Made by a program: the position numbers and the translations under genes. From positions 321,842,001-321,906,000 of the forward strand of contig NW_027362761.1 of assembly GCF_046119375.1 (NCBI RefSeq): a stretch of DNA of 64,000 nucleotides. The letters are read 5' to 3'. The number at the start of each line of letters is the position of its first letter. Positions within the stretch are counted from its first letter, which is position 1. The DNA comes from Phyllobates terribilis (taxonomy: Eukaryota). Shown here piece after piece: positions 27,918 to 60,810 of the stretch. The notes beneath the pieces were generated by a model. That model was not told the DNA's origin. It saw only the letters and a list, made by a program, of their open reading frames with translations, and did not search any database.

Positions 27918-28756
27918 AGGCTGTGTGCCCACTATGCGTTTTTTAAGCGTTTCCGCAGCGGCAATTCCGCTGCAGAAAAGCTTAAAAAAAGCTTGGTAGA
28001 GGGCATGCCATGTTCCCCAATGATAATCCGCATGTGCTGTGCACATGTTGTGGAAATTTCCGCTGCAGATTATCATTGCGGAAAAATCCGCAGCACTACC
28101 AATTATTTTGCAGAATCGCTGCATTTTCGCCGCCATTGACTTGCATTGGACCGCATGACATCCGCATCACTGCATCTGCAGATGCGGATACCATGCCTTT
28201 CAATGTGCGGATGGTACCCGGGTTTGGAGAGAGGAGACTCTCCTGCAGACCTGGGTACCATAGTACCTGTAAAAAAAAAAGAATAAAATAAAAAATATAC
28301 ATTATACTTACCTTCTGATGGCCCCCGATGTCCTTAGCGTTGCGTCCTGGCTTGCCGGCAGCTCGCGATGGTCTAAAAAGGACCTGCCATGACGTCATTT
28401 AGTCATGTGACAGGTCACGCGACCGCCGACGTCACCGGGGGCCATCAGAAGGTAAGTATATATTTATTTTTTACCATTCTTTCGGTCACACTATATAAAT
28501 CCATGCCGGTTGCATGGATTTATATAGTGTGACTAAGTTGTCAAGCACTTTCCAAGTGATGCTAAAATCGCTTGGAAAGCGATTGACAACCCACATGCGG
28601 AAATGCATGTGAAGAACGCTTCACTTACGCTTGTCCTTGGCAGGAAAAATGCATGTACAATCCGCATGTACAATCCGCATGCGTTTTTTCTGCCAGGGAG
28701 ATGCAGAAATGCTCAGGAAAAATCCGGAGCATTTCTGCATCGTGGGCACATAGCCT
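27918..28756. mobile_element. Palindromic MITE, family X copy 2
   Basis: aggctgtgtgcccactatgc / gcatcgtgggcacatagcct. Confidence 0.85.
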
Positions 28757-29272: not shown

Positions 29273-29685
29273 CAGGCTGTGGTCACACGAGCGTATGTTC
29301 TCTCGATTATGCAAATGACACTCGGCTCATACTCTGTCAGTGTTTGATTCAAGTGTCATTGCTCTGTGCTCCGATCCTCTCGCATGACAAAATCACAGCA
29401 CAGGTGTGGAGGAGACTGAGAAAGTAATTTCTCCATCTCCTCCATTACCGGTGTCCGCGGTAATCGGACTGCACTGGGATGACATCCGATTGCAGTGCGA
29501 TGTTTCGCACGCACCCATAGACTTGTATGGGTACGTGCGCTCAGATTCTCTGATGCAATCGCAGCATGCTGAATCGGCATGAGAAAATAGTTGCAGATCT
29601 GCATTGCCCCATAGTATAACATTGGGCAGAGTGCTAACCGACAAAACATTGCATAGCACTCAGCCGTGTAATACGCTCATGTGAC
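29273..29685. mobile_element. MITE whose right TIR is truncated by the retrozyme-like repeat
   Basis: Left aggctgtggtcacacgagcgtat; right atacgctcatgtgact runs directly into gacttttagg. Confidence 0.65.
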
Positions 29686-30137
29686 TTTTAGGATTGCTAC
29701 TTCCTATAGGTGACACTAGAGTTCTAGTTCTCTTCCTCTCTGAAGAGACAATTTGCATATTTCCCAGAGGAGTTTTGTGGCTTAAAGGTCTCATCACCTT
29801 GACATGCTTAACATGTCACTCTACGCAAAGAGAAACATTACCCCTTGGATACCAGTCAGACGCCTCTCACCTAGCCAAACCATATCTCACACTTTGCACT
29901 GACGATGGGCAGTGCCCCGAAACACAGTGTCTGCAAATTGAGATTTTGGCTTTGTCTATTATCCTAAGTCATGGGACAAGGCTCGTTAAAGGGTCGATAT
30001 TGACTTTTAGGATTGCTACTTCCTATAGGTGGCACTAGAGTTCTAGTCCTCTTCCTCTGTGAAGAGACAATTTGCATATTTCCCAGAGGAGCATTGTGGC
30101 TTAAAAGTCTCCTCACCTTGACATGCTTAATATGTCA
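29683..30137 (+). mobile_element. Retrozyme-like short tandem retroelement, ~1.4 copies of a 319-bp monomer
   Basis: Direct repeat gacttttaggattgctacttcc... at 29683 and 30002 (period 319); contains a type I hammerhead; dispersed relatives at 37552-37750 (-) and 44897-45118 (+). Confidence 0.8.
29893..29937 (+). ncRNA. Type I hammerhead ribozyme (one stem II mismatch)
   Basis: tttgca-CTGACGA-tgggc agt gcccc-GAAA-cac a gtg-TC-tgcaaa: stem I 6 bp, full core, GUC cleavage triplet; the 10.1-11.1 pair is U/C rather than G-C. Confidence 0.85.
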
Positions 30138-30537
30138 ACACAAGAAAGCGGGCAGGGTTGCACTACCAATATATGTATAGATATCAGATGGGCGTGCTAC
30201 GTCATGTAGAGGAAGGAAACATGATATTGTGGAAGGAGAAAGCACTACATATAGACGAGCACACCTCCAAATAGAAAAATAGCAAAAAGATTTATTGAAC
30301 TACACATGCTAAAATCATTTAAAAAACCATAATCATGGTATAAAAGCTGTCCCCCACATGACAGAAATCAATAACAATCAAGTGTATATACCCCAAACCA
30401 TTTAACTAACAAGTAATGACAAGCAATTATCATTCCTAAATGATAATAGTATTTGAACACTCTCAGTAATACATATGCAAAAAAAAATACATACTGTATA
30501 TAGTACCAAATAGCAGCTGTAAAAGAACGTCCACAGT

Positions 30538-30677
30538 NNNNNNNNNNNNNNNNNNNNNNNNNNNNNNNNNNNNNNNNNNNNNNNNNNNNNNNNNNNNNNN
30601 NNNNNNNNNNNNNNNNNNNNNNNNNNNNNNNNNNNNNNNNNNNNNNNNNNNNNNNNNNNNNNNNNNNNNNNNNNNNN
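30538..30677. other. Assembly gap (140 N)
   Basis: Run of N. Confidence 1.
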
Positions 30678-31004: not shown

Positions 31005-32179
31005 ATATGCTCTCCATCATTGTTCAAATCTTTTTATATCATCATTATTAGAGATAGGTGCTTACCGGTGGTGGTTTAGTGTTGCGCGATCGGCCCGGAC
31101 CGGAAATCACGTGGCCGGAAGAAGGTAGTACGTCAGTTCGTACAGCTCTCAACCAGAGAAGAGAGGTGGGGCGGGACGTCACATGTTATACACGTCACTC
31201 TCCACAACGAGAAATGTTACCCCTTGGATAGGAGTGTACAGGGACACACCATCAACTCGTAACGCCCAGTTGTCAATTTATTCATACATTTTAAAGCACA
31301 AAAAAAACCCAGAGGAACAGGCCAACGCTAAGACCTAAAACAAGATTCTTCTGAAATGTTATATTATGATGGATACAAGCATTTACAAACCATACCTGTC
31401 AGTAGAGCTGCAGGTACTCATTAGGAACAAGTGCTATACATTAAATACAACTTTTATAGTACAGTATTTTTCACAAAGCTTTACCCCTCCACCTGAGTTA
31501 CATCATTTTCTAGCTTGATATCTGTTATTATCAGTTTTTCACAAAACTACATTTACATTTCCTTGCTAAACACTCTTCCTTATTAGTGCTGTAAGTCAAA
31601 TGTCTCCTTGCCTGTGGGAACCGGATACTACTTGACTAGCAGACAGAAGATATTTACATTGGTTTTCTCTTCCAAGGACAACTTGTCTCTGCAGTGAAAG
31701 CCAGGGACTTAACAAAACAAAAAAATAGGTGCTTTTGCCAGCTATGTAAATGCCCATAGTGAAAAATTTAGGATCTTGTTAAATGAAATGCCCATGCATT
31801 TCACTTGTTTTCTCAACTCTTAACTGTTCACATATATGAGCTTTAAAGAAGCACTCCCATGAATATTTTTTTTTCATTAAATATATGTATAAGTGTATGG
31901 TGTGTAGTGTGAGTGTATTAATATACTCACCTACCACCGATTTCTCCATCAACTGCATAGTAGCCGTGGCCAGGTGCTGCACATTCACACTCTGTTGGTT
32001 CGAATATGGGTGAATGTGCTAAGTAACCAGCTGTGGCCACTATTCCGCTGACAGAATTTACCTGTTAAGCTTCGCAACTCAGCACATCCAGCCGCTGCCG
32101 TCGTCACTGGGAAGAGCTGATCAGCGGGGGTGCTGGGTGTGGTACCCCCACCAATCAGATATTGATGACCTATCCTGAG

Positions 32180-35810: not shown

Positions 35811-37551
35811 TTAAAACAAATGTTCATTATCAATAGGGATACTCACCATTAAATTATCTAGGAGTTAATTTGACAACATACAACCGCTTTAAGGAGATTG
35901 GTCTTTGATTAAATAAACGCAATGCTCTACCCCTATCCTGGTTTGGATGTCTTGCAGGAGTTTAGATGATTATTCTACCCAAGTTAAATCTTTCTGAGAC
36001 TTTACCAGTAGCAATCCCTTTTAATAAACTGAAGAAGCGACAGTCCTCCATTCTCCAAAGCCCACAAATGTCAGAGTTGTTAAAACAGTGATGACGGCAA
36101 GCAGACATAATGGTGGCCTATTGGTCCAAGATAAACAAATATGTTATTGGACTGCACATCTGAGAAGAATTCTGGCCTGGCCCACCCTTCCTGCATACTC
36201 TAAATCAATGGAAATAGAAAACTCTGGCTAGCTCATGTCCATCTTAAATCTTTACTATGGTCTACTGCACAGGTATAACCATCTACTCCATTACATGGCA
36301 CTATAACTTTTACGAGAACTATTTGGATAAAATATTTTGGGAAATCCTCCTTTGCATCCTCTCCCTCTCCTATGACATTGTCCCTTTATGACTCATTTCA
36401 TACAGATAGCACAACAAGAACTATGACTAAACCTTGGAGTAGGCATGGGTTATTACATATAGCAGACTTAACTGACCATATGGCTATGGAACTACTACGG
36501 TCAACAATACAAAAGTAATTTTATATTGTCTAATCAATATTTCTATCTTTAAATTAGGAACTATATTCAAAAATTATTTAGTTCTCTTAAAGTTTCGTCT
36601 CCTATGCCTTTCGAACGATTATGCAGTTCAGGGGTCTCTACTCAAGGATTAGTCTGTGACATTTATAAACTTCTAATAGACCCTGCTCCGACTGTGCCTC
36701 CTACACACTGTTATATGCAAAATTGGGCATCATTCATAATCTTCTCTATTGTCAATAAAACTGGGCAACTAATTTGGAAAAAAAACAGCCAAATCATCCA
36801 TATGCACAATATATAAGCTATTGTTTTTCTGGTACCATACCTCATCTCTCCTCCACAAACTTAACCCAAATATTTCTAATAAGTATTTGCGATGTGGAAA
36901 TACAGAGACAAAAACAATTCACATCTTCTGGTCTTTCACATCAATCCAACCTTAAAAACTTTTTTTTTGCTTAATAGATACACAGATTCCATTAAATCTT
37001 CTAGATTTTCTCCTCAATGTCCCATCATAGTGAAAAGCTGCTAGGCTGCTTCTTCACTTTCTGACAGATGTAAAATGTTTAATAGCAAAAAAAAAGGTGT
37101 CGTCACTGATGGGCCTATATTCTACACATTAAAAATATTAGGAACATGGAATACTTAACAGCCCTGCTTCAAAACAGTCGATGCCTTTTATGACACTTGG
37201 TCACTGTGGGACTATTGGCAGAACTCTATAAAGAGTCGACTACCTCCTGACACATTATTTTGTACTAATTATGAGCAATGTAGTTAAGAATGTTAATGTC
37301 TATGATCATAGGATATTTCCCCCCTATTATTCACCCCCTTATTTATGTCTTATCTTGATTTATTATTTCACCAAATTGTTTTGACTATTGTTATTTTCTT
37401 CTAACGTTATAGTTACTTAGCTCAAGTTTTAAGCTTATTTGTGTTATTTTAATAAGAACATTGTGACAATTTAACAATATTTTAGATTTTTATTTGTGGA
37501 AAGCTTCAATAACTAACCAGTAAAAAAAAAGTGTGTGGCTTATCAGGAAAT

Positions 37552-37768
37552 AGGAAGAGGACTTTAACTCTATAGCGCCACCTATTGGAAGCAGCAATCC
37601 TATAAGTCACAATCGACCCTTTAGCCAGCCTTGCAATATGACTTAAGATAATAGCCAAATCAGAATCTCAATTTGCAGACACGGTGTTTCGGGCTATTGG
37701 CCCTCGTCAGTGCAAAGTATGAGAACTGATTTGGCTAGATGAGAGGTTCTCAATGAGAAACATTACCC
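37552..37768 (-). mobile_element. Retrozyme-like copy with 13-bp TSD and short inverted terminal segment
   Basis: Reverse complement aligns with 29860-30050; flanked by cttatcaggaaat at 37539-37551 and 37769-37781. Confidence 0.75.
37672..37716 (-). ncRNA. Type I hammerhead ribozyme with intact core
   Basis: tttgca-CTGACGA-gggc caata gccc-GAAA-cac c gtg-TC-tgcaaa; all conserved core residues and the G10.1-C11.1 pair are present. Confidence 0.9.
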
Positions 37769-38172
37769 CTTATCAGGAAATGGCTTGGCTTTAAGTGCAA
37801 CAGCCCACGCCAAAAATGTGAAGCACAAAGTAAGCCATGTAATAAGTGGGTGTAAATGTAGACTAAACAAGTATTAAAATTCGATCAAACAGCATAAACC
37901 CGGCTGATTTTCAGACTGCCTAGTCTATGTTTACACTATCTAAGAAATAGACCGTATTAATAAATATGCCCTAATGGGTGTAATAATATTAATAATCTTA
38001 TTTATATAGCACTAACATATTCTGCAACACTTTCAACTGAAGAACGTGAATCAACAGACAAATAATCCCATGCATCAAAAACTGGAATAAATCATGGGGG
38101 GCGCATATACATCAAAGAATAAATGCTAGCAATGCTGTGGAAATGATAAGTGGGGTATGGCCCCATAGAATA

Positions 38173-44183: not shown

Positions 44184-44896
44184 ACGAGGAGTGTTTGGTG
44201 CATTTTTGACGCTGCATATTCTAGCTATGCAAAAAAAAAACCACAGTGTATTGCAGTTCCAGAAAAATGAATATGAGTTCTAGAATTGTCATGCCCACTG
44301 TTTTTTTTTTTTTGTAAAACCCTATCATATCCAGAATCACAATTTAACTGCAGATATAGGGTTAATTTGCAAGTAAATAGCAATAAAAGCGTACCTGCCT
44401 TACTGGAAAAGAGGCTACATGGAGAAAAAGAACTTATATCCTCCCTGCAGCCGCTCACTTCCAGTCATCAGGGGTGGGGGGGGTTGATCAGTCATCCCTC
44501 ACTATATAGTGATCGCAGATGTAATCATTCGCCAGCTCTGAACATGTACAAATGCTGAAGATCGTGCTGTCAAAGTGTCAGTTAGTGACTACAGACGCTC
44601 TCTGTATAATTAGCGGCGACTGTAATCACACCCTGCATCACCTCGATGACTGGATGCGAGTGGCCACAGGGAAATATAACTTTAATCTCTCTCTATAGCC
44701 AAGCTTCCAGTAAGGCAAGAAGGCATGATTGTAGCGCCATTTACCAGCAAATTAACCCTGTATCTGCAGGTATATAGCATTTCTGGACATGACAAGTTCT
44801 CTTTCAATAAACAGTTTGCAAATGTATACCGGGACTGACAGAGGTCAAAAGAATACCTCTTTGACCTCCATCTGGTGTAATGGGCCTTTAAAAATG

Positions 44897-45118
44897 GTTT
44901 TGGCTGTTATCCTAAGTCATGTGACAAGGCTCGTTAAAGGGTCGATATTGACTTTTAGGATTTCTACTTTCTATAGGTGTCACTAGAGCTCTAGTTCTCT
45001 TTCTCTCTGAAGAGACAATTTGCATATTTCCTAGAGCAGTATTGAGGCTTAAAAGTCTCCTCACCTTGACATGCTTAACATGTCACTCTCCGAAAGGAGA
45101 AACATTGCCCCTTGGATA
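44897..45118 (+). mobile_element. Retrozyme-like partial monomer lacking the hammerhead
   Basis: ttttggctgttatcctaagtcatg...gacttttaggatt...ccccttggata is colinear with the 319-bp monomer. Confidence 0.85.
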
Positions 45119-56669: not shown

Positions 56670-58292
<1,623 letters not shown>

Positions 58293-58298
58293 TATATA

Positions 58299-60629
58299 CA
58301 GTACAGACCAAAAGTTTTGACACACCTTCTCATTTAAAGATTTTTCTGTATTTTCATGACTATGAAAATTGTACATTCACACTGAAGGCATCAAAACTAT
58401 GAATTAACACATGTGGAATTATATACTTAACAAAAAAGTGTGAAACAACTGAAAATATGTCTTATATTCTAGGTTCTTCAAAGTAGCCAACTTTTGCTTT
58501 GATGACTGCTTTGCACACTCTTGGCATTCTCTTGATGAGCTTCAAGAGGTAGTCACCGGAAATGGTCTTCCAACAATCTTGAAGGAGTTCCCAGAGATGC
58601 TTAGCACTTGTTGGCCCTTTTGCCTTCACTCTGCGGTCCAGCTCACCCCAAACCATCTCGATTGGGTTCAGGTCTGGTGACTGTTGAGGCCAGGTCATCT
58701 GGCGTAGCACCCCATCACTCTCCTTCTTGGTCAAATAGCCCTTACACAGCCTGGAGGTGTGTTTGGGGTCATTGTCCTGTTGAAAAATAAATGATGGTCC
58801 AACTAAACGCAAACCGGATGGAATAGCATGCCGCTGCAAGATGCTGTGGTAGCCATGCTGGTTCAGTATGCCTTCAATTTTGAATAAATCCCCAACAGTG
58901 TCACCAGCAAAGCACCCCCACACCATCACACCTCCTCCTCCATGCTTCACGGTGGGAACCAGGCATGAGAGTCCATCCGTTCACCTTTTCTGCGTCGCAC
59001 AAAGACACGGTGGTTGGAACCAAAGATCTCAAATTTGGACTCATCAGACCAAAGCAAAGATTTCCACTGGTCTAATGTCCATTCCTTGTGTTCTTTAGCC
59101 CAAACAAGTCTCTTCTGCTTGTTGCCTGTCCTTAGCAGTGGTTTCCTAGCAGCTATTTTACTATGAAGGCCTGCTGCACAAAGCCTCCTCTTAACAGTTG
59201 TTGTAGAGATGTGTCTGCTGCTAGCCACCTTTAGCTTTGATGACTGCTTTGCACACTCTTGGCATTCACTTGATGAGCTTCAAGAGGTAGTCACCAGAAA
59301 TGGTTTTCACTTCACAAGTGTGCCCTGTCAGGTTTAATAAGTGGGATTTCTTGCCTTATAAATGGTGTTGGGACCATCAGTTGTGTTGTGCAGAAGTCTG
59401 GTGGATACACAGCAGATAGTCCTACTGAATAGACTGTTAGAATTTGTATTATGGCAAGAAAAAAGCAGCTAAGTAAAGAAAAACGAGTGGCCATCATTAC
59501 TTTAAGAAATGAAGGTCAGTCAGTTCGAAAAATTGGGAAAAATTTGAAAGTGTCCCCAAGTGCAGTTGCAAAAACCATCAAGCGCTACAAAGAAACTGGC
59601 TCACATGAGGACCGCCCCAGGAAAGGAAGACCAAGAGTCACCTCTGCTTCTGAGGATAAGTTTATCCGAGTCACCAGCCTCAGAAATCGCAGGTTAACAG
59701 CAGCTCAGATTAGAGACCAGGTTAATGCCACACAGAGTTCTAGCAGCAGACACATCTCTTCAACAACTGTTAAGAGGGGACTTTGTGCAGCAGGCCTTCA
59801 TGGTAAAATGGCTGCTAGGAAACCACTGCTAAGGACAGGCAACAAGCAGAAGAGACTTGTTTGGGCTAAAGAACACAAGGAATGGACATTAGACCAGTGG
59901 AAATCTTTGCTTTGGTCTGATGAGTCCAAATTTGAGATCTTTGGTTCCAACCACCGTGTCTTTGTGCGACGCAGAAAAGGTGAACGGATGGACTCTACAT
60001 GCCTGGTTCCCACTGTGAAGCATGGAGGAGGAGGTGTGATGGTGTGGGGGTGCTTTCCTGGTGACACTGTGGGGGATTTATTCAAAATTGAAGGCATACT
60101 GAACCAGCATGACTACCACAGCATCTTGCAGCGGCATGCTATTCCATCCGGTTTTGTTTAGTTGGACCATCATTTATTTTTCAACAGGACAATGACCCCA
60201 AACACACCTCCTCCAAGAAGGAGAGTGATGGGGTGCTACGCCAGATGACCTGGCCTCCACAGTCACTAGACCTGAACCCAATCGAGATGGTTTGGGGTGA
60301 GCTGGACCGCAGAGTGAAGGCAGAAGGGCCAACAAGTGCTAAGCATCTCTGGGAACTCCTTCAAGATTGTTGGAAGACCATTTCTGGTGACTACCTATTG
60401 AAGCTCATCAAGAGAATGCCAAGAGTGTGCAAAGCAGTCATCAAAACAAAAGGTGGCTACTTTGAAGAACCTAGAATAAAAGATATAATTTCAGTTGTTT
60501 CACACTTTTTTGTTAAGTACATAATTCCACACGTGTTAATTCATAGTTTTGATGCCTTCAGTGTGAATGTACAATTTTCATAGTCATGAAAATACAGAAA
60601 AATCTTTAAATGAGAAGCTTTGTCCAAAC
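58299..60629 (+). mobile_element. Rearranged DD38E (Intruder-type) Tc1-like element with inverted duplication
   Basis: ta|cagtacagaccaaaagtt; inverted transposase 3' two-thirds at 58462-59224 (-); forward transposase 59451 to about 60480; right TIR runs into the gap. QQD-38 aa-E spacing counted in the inverted arm. Confidence 0.92.
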
Positions 60630-60810
60630 NNNNNNNNNNNNNNNNNNNNNNNNNNNNNNNNNNNNNNNNNNNNNNNNNNNNNNNNNNNNNNNNNNNNNNN
60701 NNNNNNNNNNNNNNNNNNNNNNNNNNNNNNNNNNNNNNNNNNNNNNNNNNNNNNNNNNNNNNNNNNNNNNNNNNNNNNNNNNNNNNNNNNNNNNNNNNNN
60801 NNNNNNNNNN
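60630..60810. other. Assembly gap (181 N)
   Basis: Run of N. Confidence 1.

What the first reader, a model, noticed from the sequence alone, without database searches (positions are those of the whole stretch)
29683..30137. Retrozyme-like tandem repeat (319-nt monomer) carrying a type I hammerhead ribozyme
Seen: 1.4 head-to-tail copies with period 319 and a type I hammerhead at 29893-29937 (GUC cleavage after 29931; palindromic CAC-N-GTG stem III with a 1-nt loop). The 5' end joins a MITE TIR through tgact microhomology. Established: non-autonomous retrozymes in metazoans, including newt satellite 2 and axolotl repeats, are 170-400-nt tandem monomers with minimal type I hammerheads that cleave as dimers, give circular RNAs and are thought to be mobilised by Penelope-like elements. 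Inference: three dispersed copies in 16 kb suggest an abundant frog retrozyme family that standard annotation would leave unclassified.
Basis: partly seen in the sequence, partly recalled or inferred. Interest (0 to 1): 0.72.

Follow-up and report, generated by a model that had tools for sequence, protein, structure and literature searches.

The report
Truncated frog hammerhead retrozyme copy
This is one old, cut-short copy (1.4 units of 319 bases) of a very abundant amphibian jumping repeat that carries a self-cleaving "hammerhead" RNA motif; the kind is already well described and this copy is almost certainly inert.

Summary
Window 29682-30137 is 1.43 head-to-tail units of a 319-nt repeat. 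A type I hammerhead motif lies at 29893-29937: 6-bp helix I, CUGACGA, 4-bp helix II, GAAA, palindromic ACAC-N-GUGU helix III, GUC with predicted cleavage after 29931. Three more pieces of the family lie in the window, and every insertion long enough spans the unit junction in a different phase. One has a 13-bp target-site duplication and a short 5' inversion, which points to insertion by reverse transcription of a multimeric or circular RNA. Contigs of a DNA run pile up on the repeat 10^3-10^5 times higher than on the unique flank.

It is a non-LTR retrozyme of the newt satellite-2 kind, described in amphibians in 2020 and 2026. This scan has already noted the family dozens of times on other DNA of this genome.

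This locus is a dead copy. It holds only one hammerhead. Position 10.1 is U where nearly all family contigs read G, which breaks the G10.1-C11.1 pair. It therefore cannot release a unit-length RNA or a circle. Rfam models do not detect it. Expression is not shown.

One loose thread remains. Insertion ends cluster at unit position 170-172, downstream of an octamer and a PSE-like box, which recalls the snRNA-type promoter of newt satellite 2.

The parts
29682..30000 (+). Unit 1 of the 319-nt repeat (copy A); unit position 1 = 29682
   Evidence: Direct repeat with spacing 319; blastn of the unit against the window; GC 0.44
30001..30137 (+). Partial unit 2 (unit positions 1-137), 94% identical to unit 1 with 8 differences
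   Evidence: Family contigs run on past 30137 with the expected unit sequence, seen as a loose end at 30137, so this is a true 3' end of the copy
29885..29943 (+). Extended type I hammerhead motif: helix I 6 bp, an internal loop, then 5 more bp; core CUGACGA..GAAA..GUC; predicted cleavage after 29931
   Evidence: Read directly; fold keeps helices I and II. U at 29906 (position 10.1) and G at 29914 (loop 2) differ from nearly all family contigs, which read G and A (table 3)
29751..29758 (+). Oct-1 octamer ATTTGCAT (unit 70-77); also at 30070-30077 and 45018-45025
   Evidence: Not rare in the window as a word (7 found, 7.3 expected). Kept in all three units that cover the position. Consensus taken from PMC5493778
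29794..29803 (+). PSE-like box TCACCTTGAC (unit 113-122); also at 30113-30122 and 45061-45070
   Evidence: 4 found, 3.9 expected in the window. Matches the first 10 letters of the PSE consensus in PMC5493778. Function is inferred only
29282..29685 (.). MITE-like element of about 404 bp with 15-nt terminal inverted repeats; abuts the 5' end of copy A with 4 shared letters (TGAC, 29682-29685)
   Evidence: It is itself a repeat (depth 6.5e3-8.6e4 in the DNA run). No matching target-site duplication around it
37552..37768 (-). Copy C: 14-15 nt inverted piece (37755-37768, reverse complement of unit ~151-165), then unit 172-319 and 1-56. Hammerhead with a canonical core at 37710-37678
   Evidence: Sub-threshold Rfam match to RAGATH-1-hammerhead (16.2 bits against a gathering score of 56.3, E=3)
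37769..37781 (-). Upstream target-site duplication ATTTCCTGATAAG of copy C
   Evidence: Exact 13-nt match to 37539-37551
37539..37551 (-). Downstream target-site duplication of copy C
44892..45118 (+). Copy B: unit ~262-319 followed by 1-170; no hammerhead core; spans the unit junction
   Evidence: 91-93% identity to copy A
31181..31230 (+). Fragment D: unit 121-170, 82% identity; ends at the same unit position as copy B

Best explanation
Window 29682-30137 is an old, truncated insertion of 1.43 units from a very abundant amphibian non-LTR retrozyme (newt satellite-2-like) family. The proposed life cycle of the family, taken from the literature, is as follows. Multimeric genomic arrays are transcribed. 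The type I hammerheads, whose weak palindromic helix III makes them pair up two by two, cut the RNA into unit lengths. A host tRNA ligase (RtcB) circularises the units. The reverse transcriptase and endonuclease of Penelope-like elements then copy multimeric or circular RNA into new sites. What the window shows is the outcome of that last step: copies longer than one unit or in arbitrary phase, all carrying the unit junction, and one with a target-site duplication and a twin-priming-type 5' inversion. What is inferred is transcription, cleavage, circularisation and the identity of the reverse transcriptase. The copy under study has one hammerhead only and a broken G10.1-C11.1 pair. At this locus it is an inert fossil lying next to a MITE, not a source of circular RNA.
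For: The repeat and the motif anatomy are as described. A second copy in the window has the same motif with a canonical core. The strict descriptor expects 0.0067 hits per 64 kb by chance. Helix II co-varies: copy C has GGGC/GCCC, whereas the family majority implied by table 3 is GGGG/CCCC, so the fourth pair is switched on both sides. Copies A, B and C all contain the 319->1 junction with different end points. Copy C has a 13-bp target-site duplication and an inverted 5' piece taken from just upstream of its direct part. Abundance is shown. GC is 0.44, there is no ORF, and there is no LTR. These features fit the published definition: ~300-bp tandem units, GC <45-50%, type I hammerhead, and target-site duplications longer than 4 bp when present (PMC7229834). 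Helix I of 6 bp, helix II of 4 bp and a short palindromic helix III match the canonical metazoan hammerhead, which is active as a dimer (PMC4209133). Amphibian retrozyme consensus averages 316 bp and derives from Penelope pLTRs (preprint). Decay of this copy: 29906 T against G in 159,191 of 161,916 depth units, 29914 G against A, at least 17 further majority differences, and 6% divergence between its two units.
Against: Rfam hammerhead models do not reach even E<=10 on this copy and only 16 bits on copy C. No cleavage, RNA ends or circles could be examined, because every run was available only as contigs and its RNA status is a guess. The retrozyme-to-MITE depth ratio is about the same in the 'RNA?' runs (9-17) as in the DNA run (11), so there is no sign of specific expression. 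No Penelope-like RT ORF lies in the window; the only ORFs >=150 aa are Tc1-type transposase pieces. Copies A, B and D show no target-site duplication. Circular fold stability is only modest, z = -2.1.
Confidence: 0.85

Rival explanations
1. The pieces are solo pseudo-LTR remnants of an autonomous Penelope-like element, not a separate non-autonomous retrozyme family.
For: In Xenopus, nearly every retrozyme family is sister to a PLE pLTR (preprint). PLEs carry hammerheads in their pLTRs (PMC4209133). Other notes of this scan report PLEs with hammerheads in this genome (unchecked).
Against: All three longer copies join unit end to unit start directly, with no internal PLE sequence. No RT or GIY-YIG ORF lies nearby. 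The motif is the canonical 6-bp/4-bp type with a palindromic helix III, not the minimal PLE variant described in PMC4209133.
Confidence: 0.08
2. This locus is a live retrozyme source that yields a ~320-nt linear and circular RNA.
For: It is longer than one unit. Octamer and PSE-like boxes are present in both units. Helices I and III of the hammerhead are intact.
Against: There is only one hammerhead in the 456 nt, because unit 2 stops at unit position 137 and the motif lies at 204-262. Two cuts, and an intramolecular double hammerhead, are therefore impossible. U10.1.C11.1 breaks a conserved pair that the family majority keeps. The copy is at least 4% diverged from the family majority.
Confidence: 0.03
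3. It is ordinary satellite DNA spread by recombination, and the hammerhead is a non-functional relic everywhere in the family.
For: Tandem organisation; no demonstrated RNA; eight of nine Xenopus dimer constructs did not cleave in vitro (preprint).
Against: Copy C has a 13-bp target-site duplication plus a 5' inversion. The copies are dispersed, short and phase-permuted. The family majority keeps every core letter and restores G10.1-C11.1. Helix II shows a compensatory change between copy C and the majority.
Confidence: 0.04

Closest known systems
Metazoan non-LTR retrozymes (Cervera & de la Pena 2020, PMC7229834; axolotl Rtz331/Rtz353)
   Same: Head-to-tail units of about 320-330 nt, low GC (0.44), no ORF, LTR, PBS or PPT. 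One type I hammerhead per unit with a weak palindromic helix III that is expected to need a partner. Very high copy number. A target-site duplication longer than 4 bp.
   Different: Here helix III is ACAC-N-GUGU (an odd palindrome with one central unpaired base), not the 1-2 bp stem with a palindromic tetraloop described for axolotl. Sequence homology to the salamander units was not tested. No RNA data were available for this species.
Newt satellite 2 (Epstein & Gall 1987; Forster et al. 1988; Coats et al. 1994, as cited in PMC7229834 and PMC2220036)
   Same: A ~330-bp unit with a hammerhead that works best as a dimer or in extended form. The frog unit also carries an octamer and a PSE-like box, which recalls the snRNA-type promoter proven for the newt.
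   Different: The host is an anuran, and the copies here are dispersed short insertions, not long arrays. Promoter function is inferred from motifs that are individually common. The Coats paper could not be read.
Xenopus non-LTR retrozyme families, e.g. REP4_XT (Li, Clavereau & Pollet 2026, doi 10.64898/2026.07.22.740005)
   Same: Anuran families with mean amphibian consensus of 316 bp, occurring as monomers, dimers and multimers, about 43% of them intronic, and related to PLE pLTRs.
   Different: The species here is coded and probably has a much larger genome.
Penelope-like-element minimal hammerheads (Cervera & de la Pena 2014, PMC4209133)
   Same: The same ACAC-N-GUGU helix III occurs in hammerheads from marine metagenome contigs, one of them in tandem 281 nt apart (L001 and L002). 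They are likely dimer-dependent.
   Different: The frog motif has the canonical 6-bp helix I and 4-bp helix II with loops, not the long helix II and short helix I of the minimal PLE variants. No adjacent RT gene.

Membership tests
Hammerhead ribozyme, type I | Core boxes CUGANGA and GAAA and a cleavage triplet NUH, in the order helix I strand, core, helix II hairpin, GAAA, helix III hairpin, UH, helix I strand | tested here: met
   29899-29905 CTGACGA, 29919-29922 GAAA, 29929-29931 GTC, open helix I; the same in copy C
Hammerhead ribozyme, type I | Helix II closed by a G10.1-C11.1 pair | tested here: not met
   Copy A has U29906 opposite C29918. Copy C and nearly all family contigs have G. The family meets this feature; this copy does not
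Hammerhead ribozyme, type I | Match to the Rfam hammerhead covariance models at gathering score | tested here: not met
   No hit at gathering score. None at E<=10 on copy A. Copy C gets 16.2 bits against 56.3 for RF03152 only. The 1-nt helix III loop is the likely reason
Hammerhead ribozyme, type I | Self-cleavage at the predicted site | not testable with these tools
   Only contigs were available, with no read ends (table 6 empty)
Metazoan non-LTR retrozyme | Head-to-tail units of about 170-400 nt, each with a type I hammerhead | tested here: met
   Unit of 319 nt, 1.43 copies. The junction is present in three independent copies. At this locus only one of the two units reaches the hammerhead
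Metazoan non-LTR retrozyme | Low GC; no ORF, LTR, PBS or PPT | tested here: met
   GC 0.44; no ORF >=150 aa in or near the copies; no terminal repeats other than the unit itself
Metazoan non-LTR retrozyme | Dispersed insertions with target-site duplications longer than 4 bp, when present | tested here: met
   13-bp duplication around copy C; none detectable for A, B or D
Metazoan non-LTR retrozyme | Expressed as unit-length linear and circular RNA | tested here: inconclusive
   Family contigs are present in three runs guessed to be RNA, from three organisms. However, the retrozyme/MITE depth ratio equals that of the DNA run, and contigs show no ends or circles
Metazoan non-LTR retrozyme | Co-occurrence with autonomous Penelope-like elements | not tested
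   None in this window. Other notes of the scan report them in this genome, unchecked by me
Newt satellite 2 | Sequence homology of the whole ~330-bp unit | not testable with these tools
   No salamander sequence was reachable through the tools
Newt satellite 2 | Internal snRNA-type promoter (octamer plus PSE) driving unit-length transcripts | tested here: inconclusive
   ATTTGCAT at unit 70-77 and TCACCTTGAC at unit 113-122 in every unit that covers them. Each word is at chance frequency in the window. No clear 3' box

The most novel reading that the evidence does not exclude
The anuran unit may carry an internal snRNA-type Pol II promoter like newt satellite 2: an octamer at unit 70-77 and a PSE-like box at 113-122. 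On this reading, promoter-initiated linear RNAs starting near unit position 172 are templates for retrotransposition, and not only hammerhead-cut circles. The support is as follows. Three of eight insertion ends in this window fall at unit 170-172 (P about 0.01 by simulation). That position lies about 58 nt after the start of the PSE-like box. No end lies clearly at the hammerhead cleavage site (unit 250/251).
Probability: 0.15. Interest if true: 0.5.

Novelty: new member of a known kind. Interest (0 to 1): 0.2.

Why it matters
It matters little on its own. It is one more decayed copy of a hammerhead-bearing retroelement class known since the newt satellite 2 work of 1987, formalised in 2020, and surveyed across vertebrates, including frogs, in 2026.

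It has three uses. First, it is annotation: these repeats should be labelled as non-LTR retrozyme fragments. Second, it is a reminder that Rfam hammerhead models miss this dimer-type helix III. Third, copy C is a clean example of target-primed insertion, with a 13-bp duplication and a 5' inversion.

The clustering of insertion ends downstream of snRNA-promoter-like boxes could be worth a genome-wide count. It would bear on which RNA form, promoter-started linear or ribozyme-cut circular, is actually reverse-transcribed.

Tried and rejected
TRF on 28-32 kb finds no array because there are too few copies.

Rfam finds nothing useful, either at gathering score on the whole window or at E<=10 on both hammerhead copies.

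A loose hammerhead pattern is uninformative: 5 hits against 2.55 expected. It was replaced by a strict descriptor with simulated controls.

RNAcofold of the motif as a homodimer only swaps the same helices between strands and does not model the double hammerhead. No conclusion was drawn from it.

A metagenome scan for the core with ACAC-N-GUGU returned three contigs from other organisms, one of them a 281-nt tandem. There is no homology outside the core, so they gave no extra frog copies for covariation.

The supplement of the 2026 preprint held as text is an oligo order sheet, not consensus sequences. Coats et al. 1994 is not held.

I considered copy A and fragment D as one insertion split by about 1 kb with a 17-nt duplication. 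I rejected this because D is only 82% like unit 1, whereas unit 2 is 94% like it, and the DNA between them is low-copy.

No target-site duplication was found for A, B, D or the MITE. No clear snRNA 3' box was found by eye.

No family consensus was built. Only single majority letters from table 3 are quoted. The N runs at 30538-30677 and 60630-60810 were left alone.

Full report
**What is there**

Window 29682-30137 consists of a 319-nt unit (29682-30000) followed head to tail by its first 137 nt (30001-30137). The two overlapping parts are 94% identical, with 8 differences. Tandem Repeats Finder does not report it because 1.43 copies is too few.

- Helix I: TTTGCA (29893-29898) paired with TGCAAA (29932-29937).
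- Core: CTGACGA (29899-29905).
- Helix II: within 29906-29918.
- GAAA: 29919-29922.
- Helix III: A-CAC-A-GTG-T (29922-29930).
- C17 at 29931, so the predicted cut is after 29931.

Helix I is open-ended, which makes the motif type I. Helix I continues beyond a small internal loop (CAC opposite U) with TCTCA (29885-29889) paired with TGAGA (29939-29943). This is the "extended" form (the fold keeps these helices).

**Is it more than chance?**

A loose pattern is not informative: 5 hits against 2.55 expected. I therefore used a strict descriptor that requires both core boxes, at least 3 nested pairs in helix II starting at 10.1-11.1, A15.1-U16.1 plus at least 2 pairs in helix III, a non-G residue at position 17, and at least 4 pairs in helix I.

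This descriptor finds one hit in the window, at 37710-37678 on the minus strand. It finds 0.0067 hits per 64 kb of first-order Markov sequence, that is 2 hits in 300 simulations. The hit is the sister copy of the same repeat.

Copy A fails the descriptor at one point only: position 10.1 is U (29906) opposite C11.1 (29918).

**The family and this copy's state**

Laying contigs of four public runs on 29300-30500 shows three things.

- The repeat is extremely abundant. In the best DNA run of the same (coded) organism, 32,771 contigs lie on the stretch at >=85% identity. Summed depth is 9e4-1.4e6 across 29710-30119, against 10-220 on the unique flank 30161-30500. These figures are not copy numbers, but the contrast is three to five orders of magnitude.
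- Nearly all family contigs read G at 29906 (159,191 of 161,916 depth units in the DNA run, and likewise in the other three runs) and A at 29914. The family majority therefore has an intact G10.1-C11.1 pair and a GGGG/CCCC helix II with a 5-nt loop. Copy A carries two private changes inside the ribozyme. No majority alternative is listed at any core-box letter. Copy C has GGGC/GCCC, so the fourth pair of helix II is changed on both sides relative to the majority, a compensatory change.
- Copy A differs from the majority at 17 or more further listed places, so it is old.

I quote single majority letters only and built no consensus.

**Other copies and how they got there**

Blastn and local alignment give the following pieces:
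- Copy B, 44892-45118(+): unit ~262-319 then 1-170.
- Copy C, 37552-37768(-): unit 172-319 then 1-56.
- Fragment D, 31181-31230(+): unit 121-170.

Copies A, B and C all contain the junction from unit end to unit start, but begin and end at different unit positions. The source was therefore a multimer or a circle, not a linear element with fixed ends plus internal sequence.

Copy C is flanked by an exact 13-nt duplication, ATTTCCTGATAAG (37769-37781 and 37539-37551). It starts with a 14-15-nt piece that is the reverse complement of unit ~151-165, the sequence lying just upstream of where its direct part starts. A target-site duplication together with a 5' inversion and a small junction deletion is the signature of target-primed reverse transcription with twin priming. 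That interpretation rests on established knowledge of LINE-type insertion.

No target-site duplication is detectable for A, B or D.

The 5' end of copy A abuts a ~404-bp MITE-like element with 15-nt terminal inverted repeats (29282-29296 and 29671-29685). The letters TGAC (29682-29685) belong to both. The MITE has no matching duplication either, so the order of events there is unresolved.

**What it is**

The features are: a unit of about 320 nt, GC 0.44, no ORF, one type I hammerhead per unit with a 6-bp helix I, a 4-bp helix II and a short palindromic helix III, very high copy number, and a target-site duplication longer than 4 bp.

These are the published definition of metazoan non-LTR retrozymes (PMC7229834) and of the canonical metazoan hammerhead that is active mainly as a dimer (PMC4209133).

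The class is already known in amphibians:
- Newt satellite 2 and axolotl Rtz331/Rtz353.
- A 2026 survey found such elements in all seven Amphibia sampled, with a mean consensus of 316 bp. It counted 57 families in Xenopus, nearly all sister to Penelope-like pLTRs. In vitro, only one of nine dimer constructs cleaved.

This scan has itself noted the same ~328-333-nt family dozens of times on other DNA of this genome, and two earlier follow-ups reached the same verdict. I take those as leads, not evidence.

**How it most likely works, and what applies here**

The family-level mechanism comes from the literature and is not shown here. It runs as follows: transcription of multimers; pairwise folding of neighbouring hammerheads into a double hammerhead and cleavage after GUC; circularisation by RtcB-type ligase; then reverse transcription and insertion by Penelope-like enzymes.

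At this locus that cycle cannot run:
- Unit 2 stops at unit position 137 and the motif lies at unit 204-262, so there is a single hammerhead.
- There is no second cut site and no intramolecular partner.
- The one motif present has lost the 10.1-11.1 pair.

Copy A is a fossil.

Expression remains open. Family contigs occur in three runs guessed to be RNA, from three coded organisms. However, the retrozyme-to-MITE depth ratio there (about 9, 13 and 17) is like that of the DNA run (about 11), and contigs carry no end or strand information. The circular fold of the unit is only modestly more stable than shuffles, z = -2.1.

**Database tests**

- Rfam hammerhead models do not detect copy A even at E<=10.
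- Copy C gets only a 16-bit alignment to RAGATH-1-hammerhead, which does place the core, helix I and the 1-nt helix III loop as I read them.
- A metagenome scan for the core with ACAC-N-GUGU found the same helix III design in hammerheads of unrelated marine contigs, one a tandem 281 nt apart. The design is a recurrent natural one that curated models miss.

**Loose thread**

B and D both end at unit 170, and the direct part of C starts at 172. Three of eight ends falling within 3 nt has P of about 0.01 under random placement.

Upstream in the unit lie an Oct-1 octamer (unit 70-77) and TCACCTTGAC (unit 113-122). The latter equals the first ten letters of the PSE consensus quoted in PMC5493778. 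Position 172 is about 58 nt after the start of that box. This is where an snRNA-type start site would fall, and newt satellite 2 is reported to use such a promoter (Coats 1994, as cited in PMC2220036; the paper itself is not held).

Each word alone is at chance frequency in the window. The alignment depth near unit 170-173 is low, but this may only reflect private changes of copy A. I found no clear 3' box. I give this reading about 15%.

**Surroundings**

The only ORFs of 150 aa or more in the window are Tc1/mariner transposase pieces at 57-60 kb. No Penelope-like RT is present. The host-gene assignment made in another note on this window was not tested. The N runs at 30538-30677 and 60630-60810 were left untouched.

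**Verdict**

It is a new member, at most, of a well-known kind, and of low interest.

Noticed in passing
window 37539-37781 (-): Sister copy with a canonical hammerhead core, an exact 13-bp target-site duplication (ATTTCCTGATAAG) and a 14-15-nt 5' inversion of the twin-priming type. It is the cleanest evidence in the window for insertion by target-primed reverse transcription.
   Followed up: yes
window 29282-29685: A ~404-bp MITE-like element with 15-nt terminal inverted repeats (GTCACAYGAGCGTAT). It is itself high-copy in the DNA run and has no matching target-site duplication. It shares its last four letters with the start of the retrozyme copy.
   Followed up: partly
unit positions 170-172 (window 29851-29853; ends of copies at 45118, 31230, ~37754): Three of eight insertion ends coincide within 3 nt (P about 0.01). 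The point lies about 58 nt downstream of a PSE-like box and about 100 nt downstream of an octamer that are kept in every unit.
   Followed up: partly
window 57124-60161: Three ORFs of 162-236 aa are pieces of Tc1/mariner-type transposases (HTH_Tnp_Tc3_2, DDE_3), on both strands around the N run at 60630-60810.
   Followed up: partly
L001:2643-2956 and L002:949-981 (metagenome contigs): Hammerheads of unrelated, probably marine-animal, origin share the ACAC-N-GUGU helix III. In L001 two identical motifs lie 281 nt apart in tandem. There is no similarity to the frog unit outside the core.
   Followed up: partly
window 28303-28590: Several long, near-perfect hairpin-forming inverted repeats, e.g. 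28485-28506/28512-28533 (22 nt, 100%) and 28303-28339/28424-28460 (37 nt, 86%), upstream of the MITE. They are probably other foldback or MITE elements.
   Followed up: no
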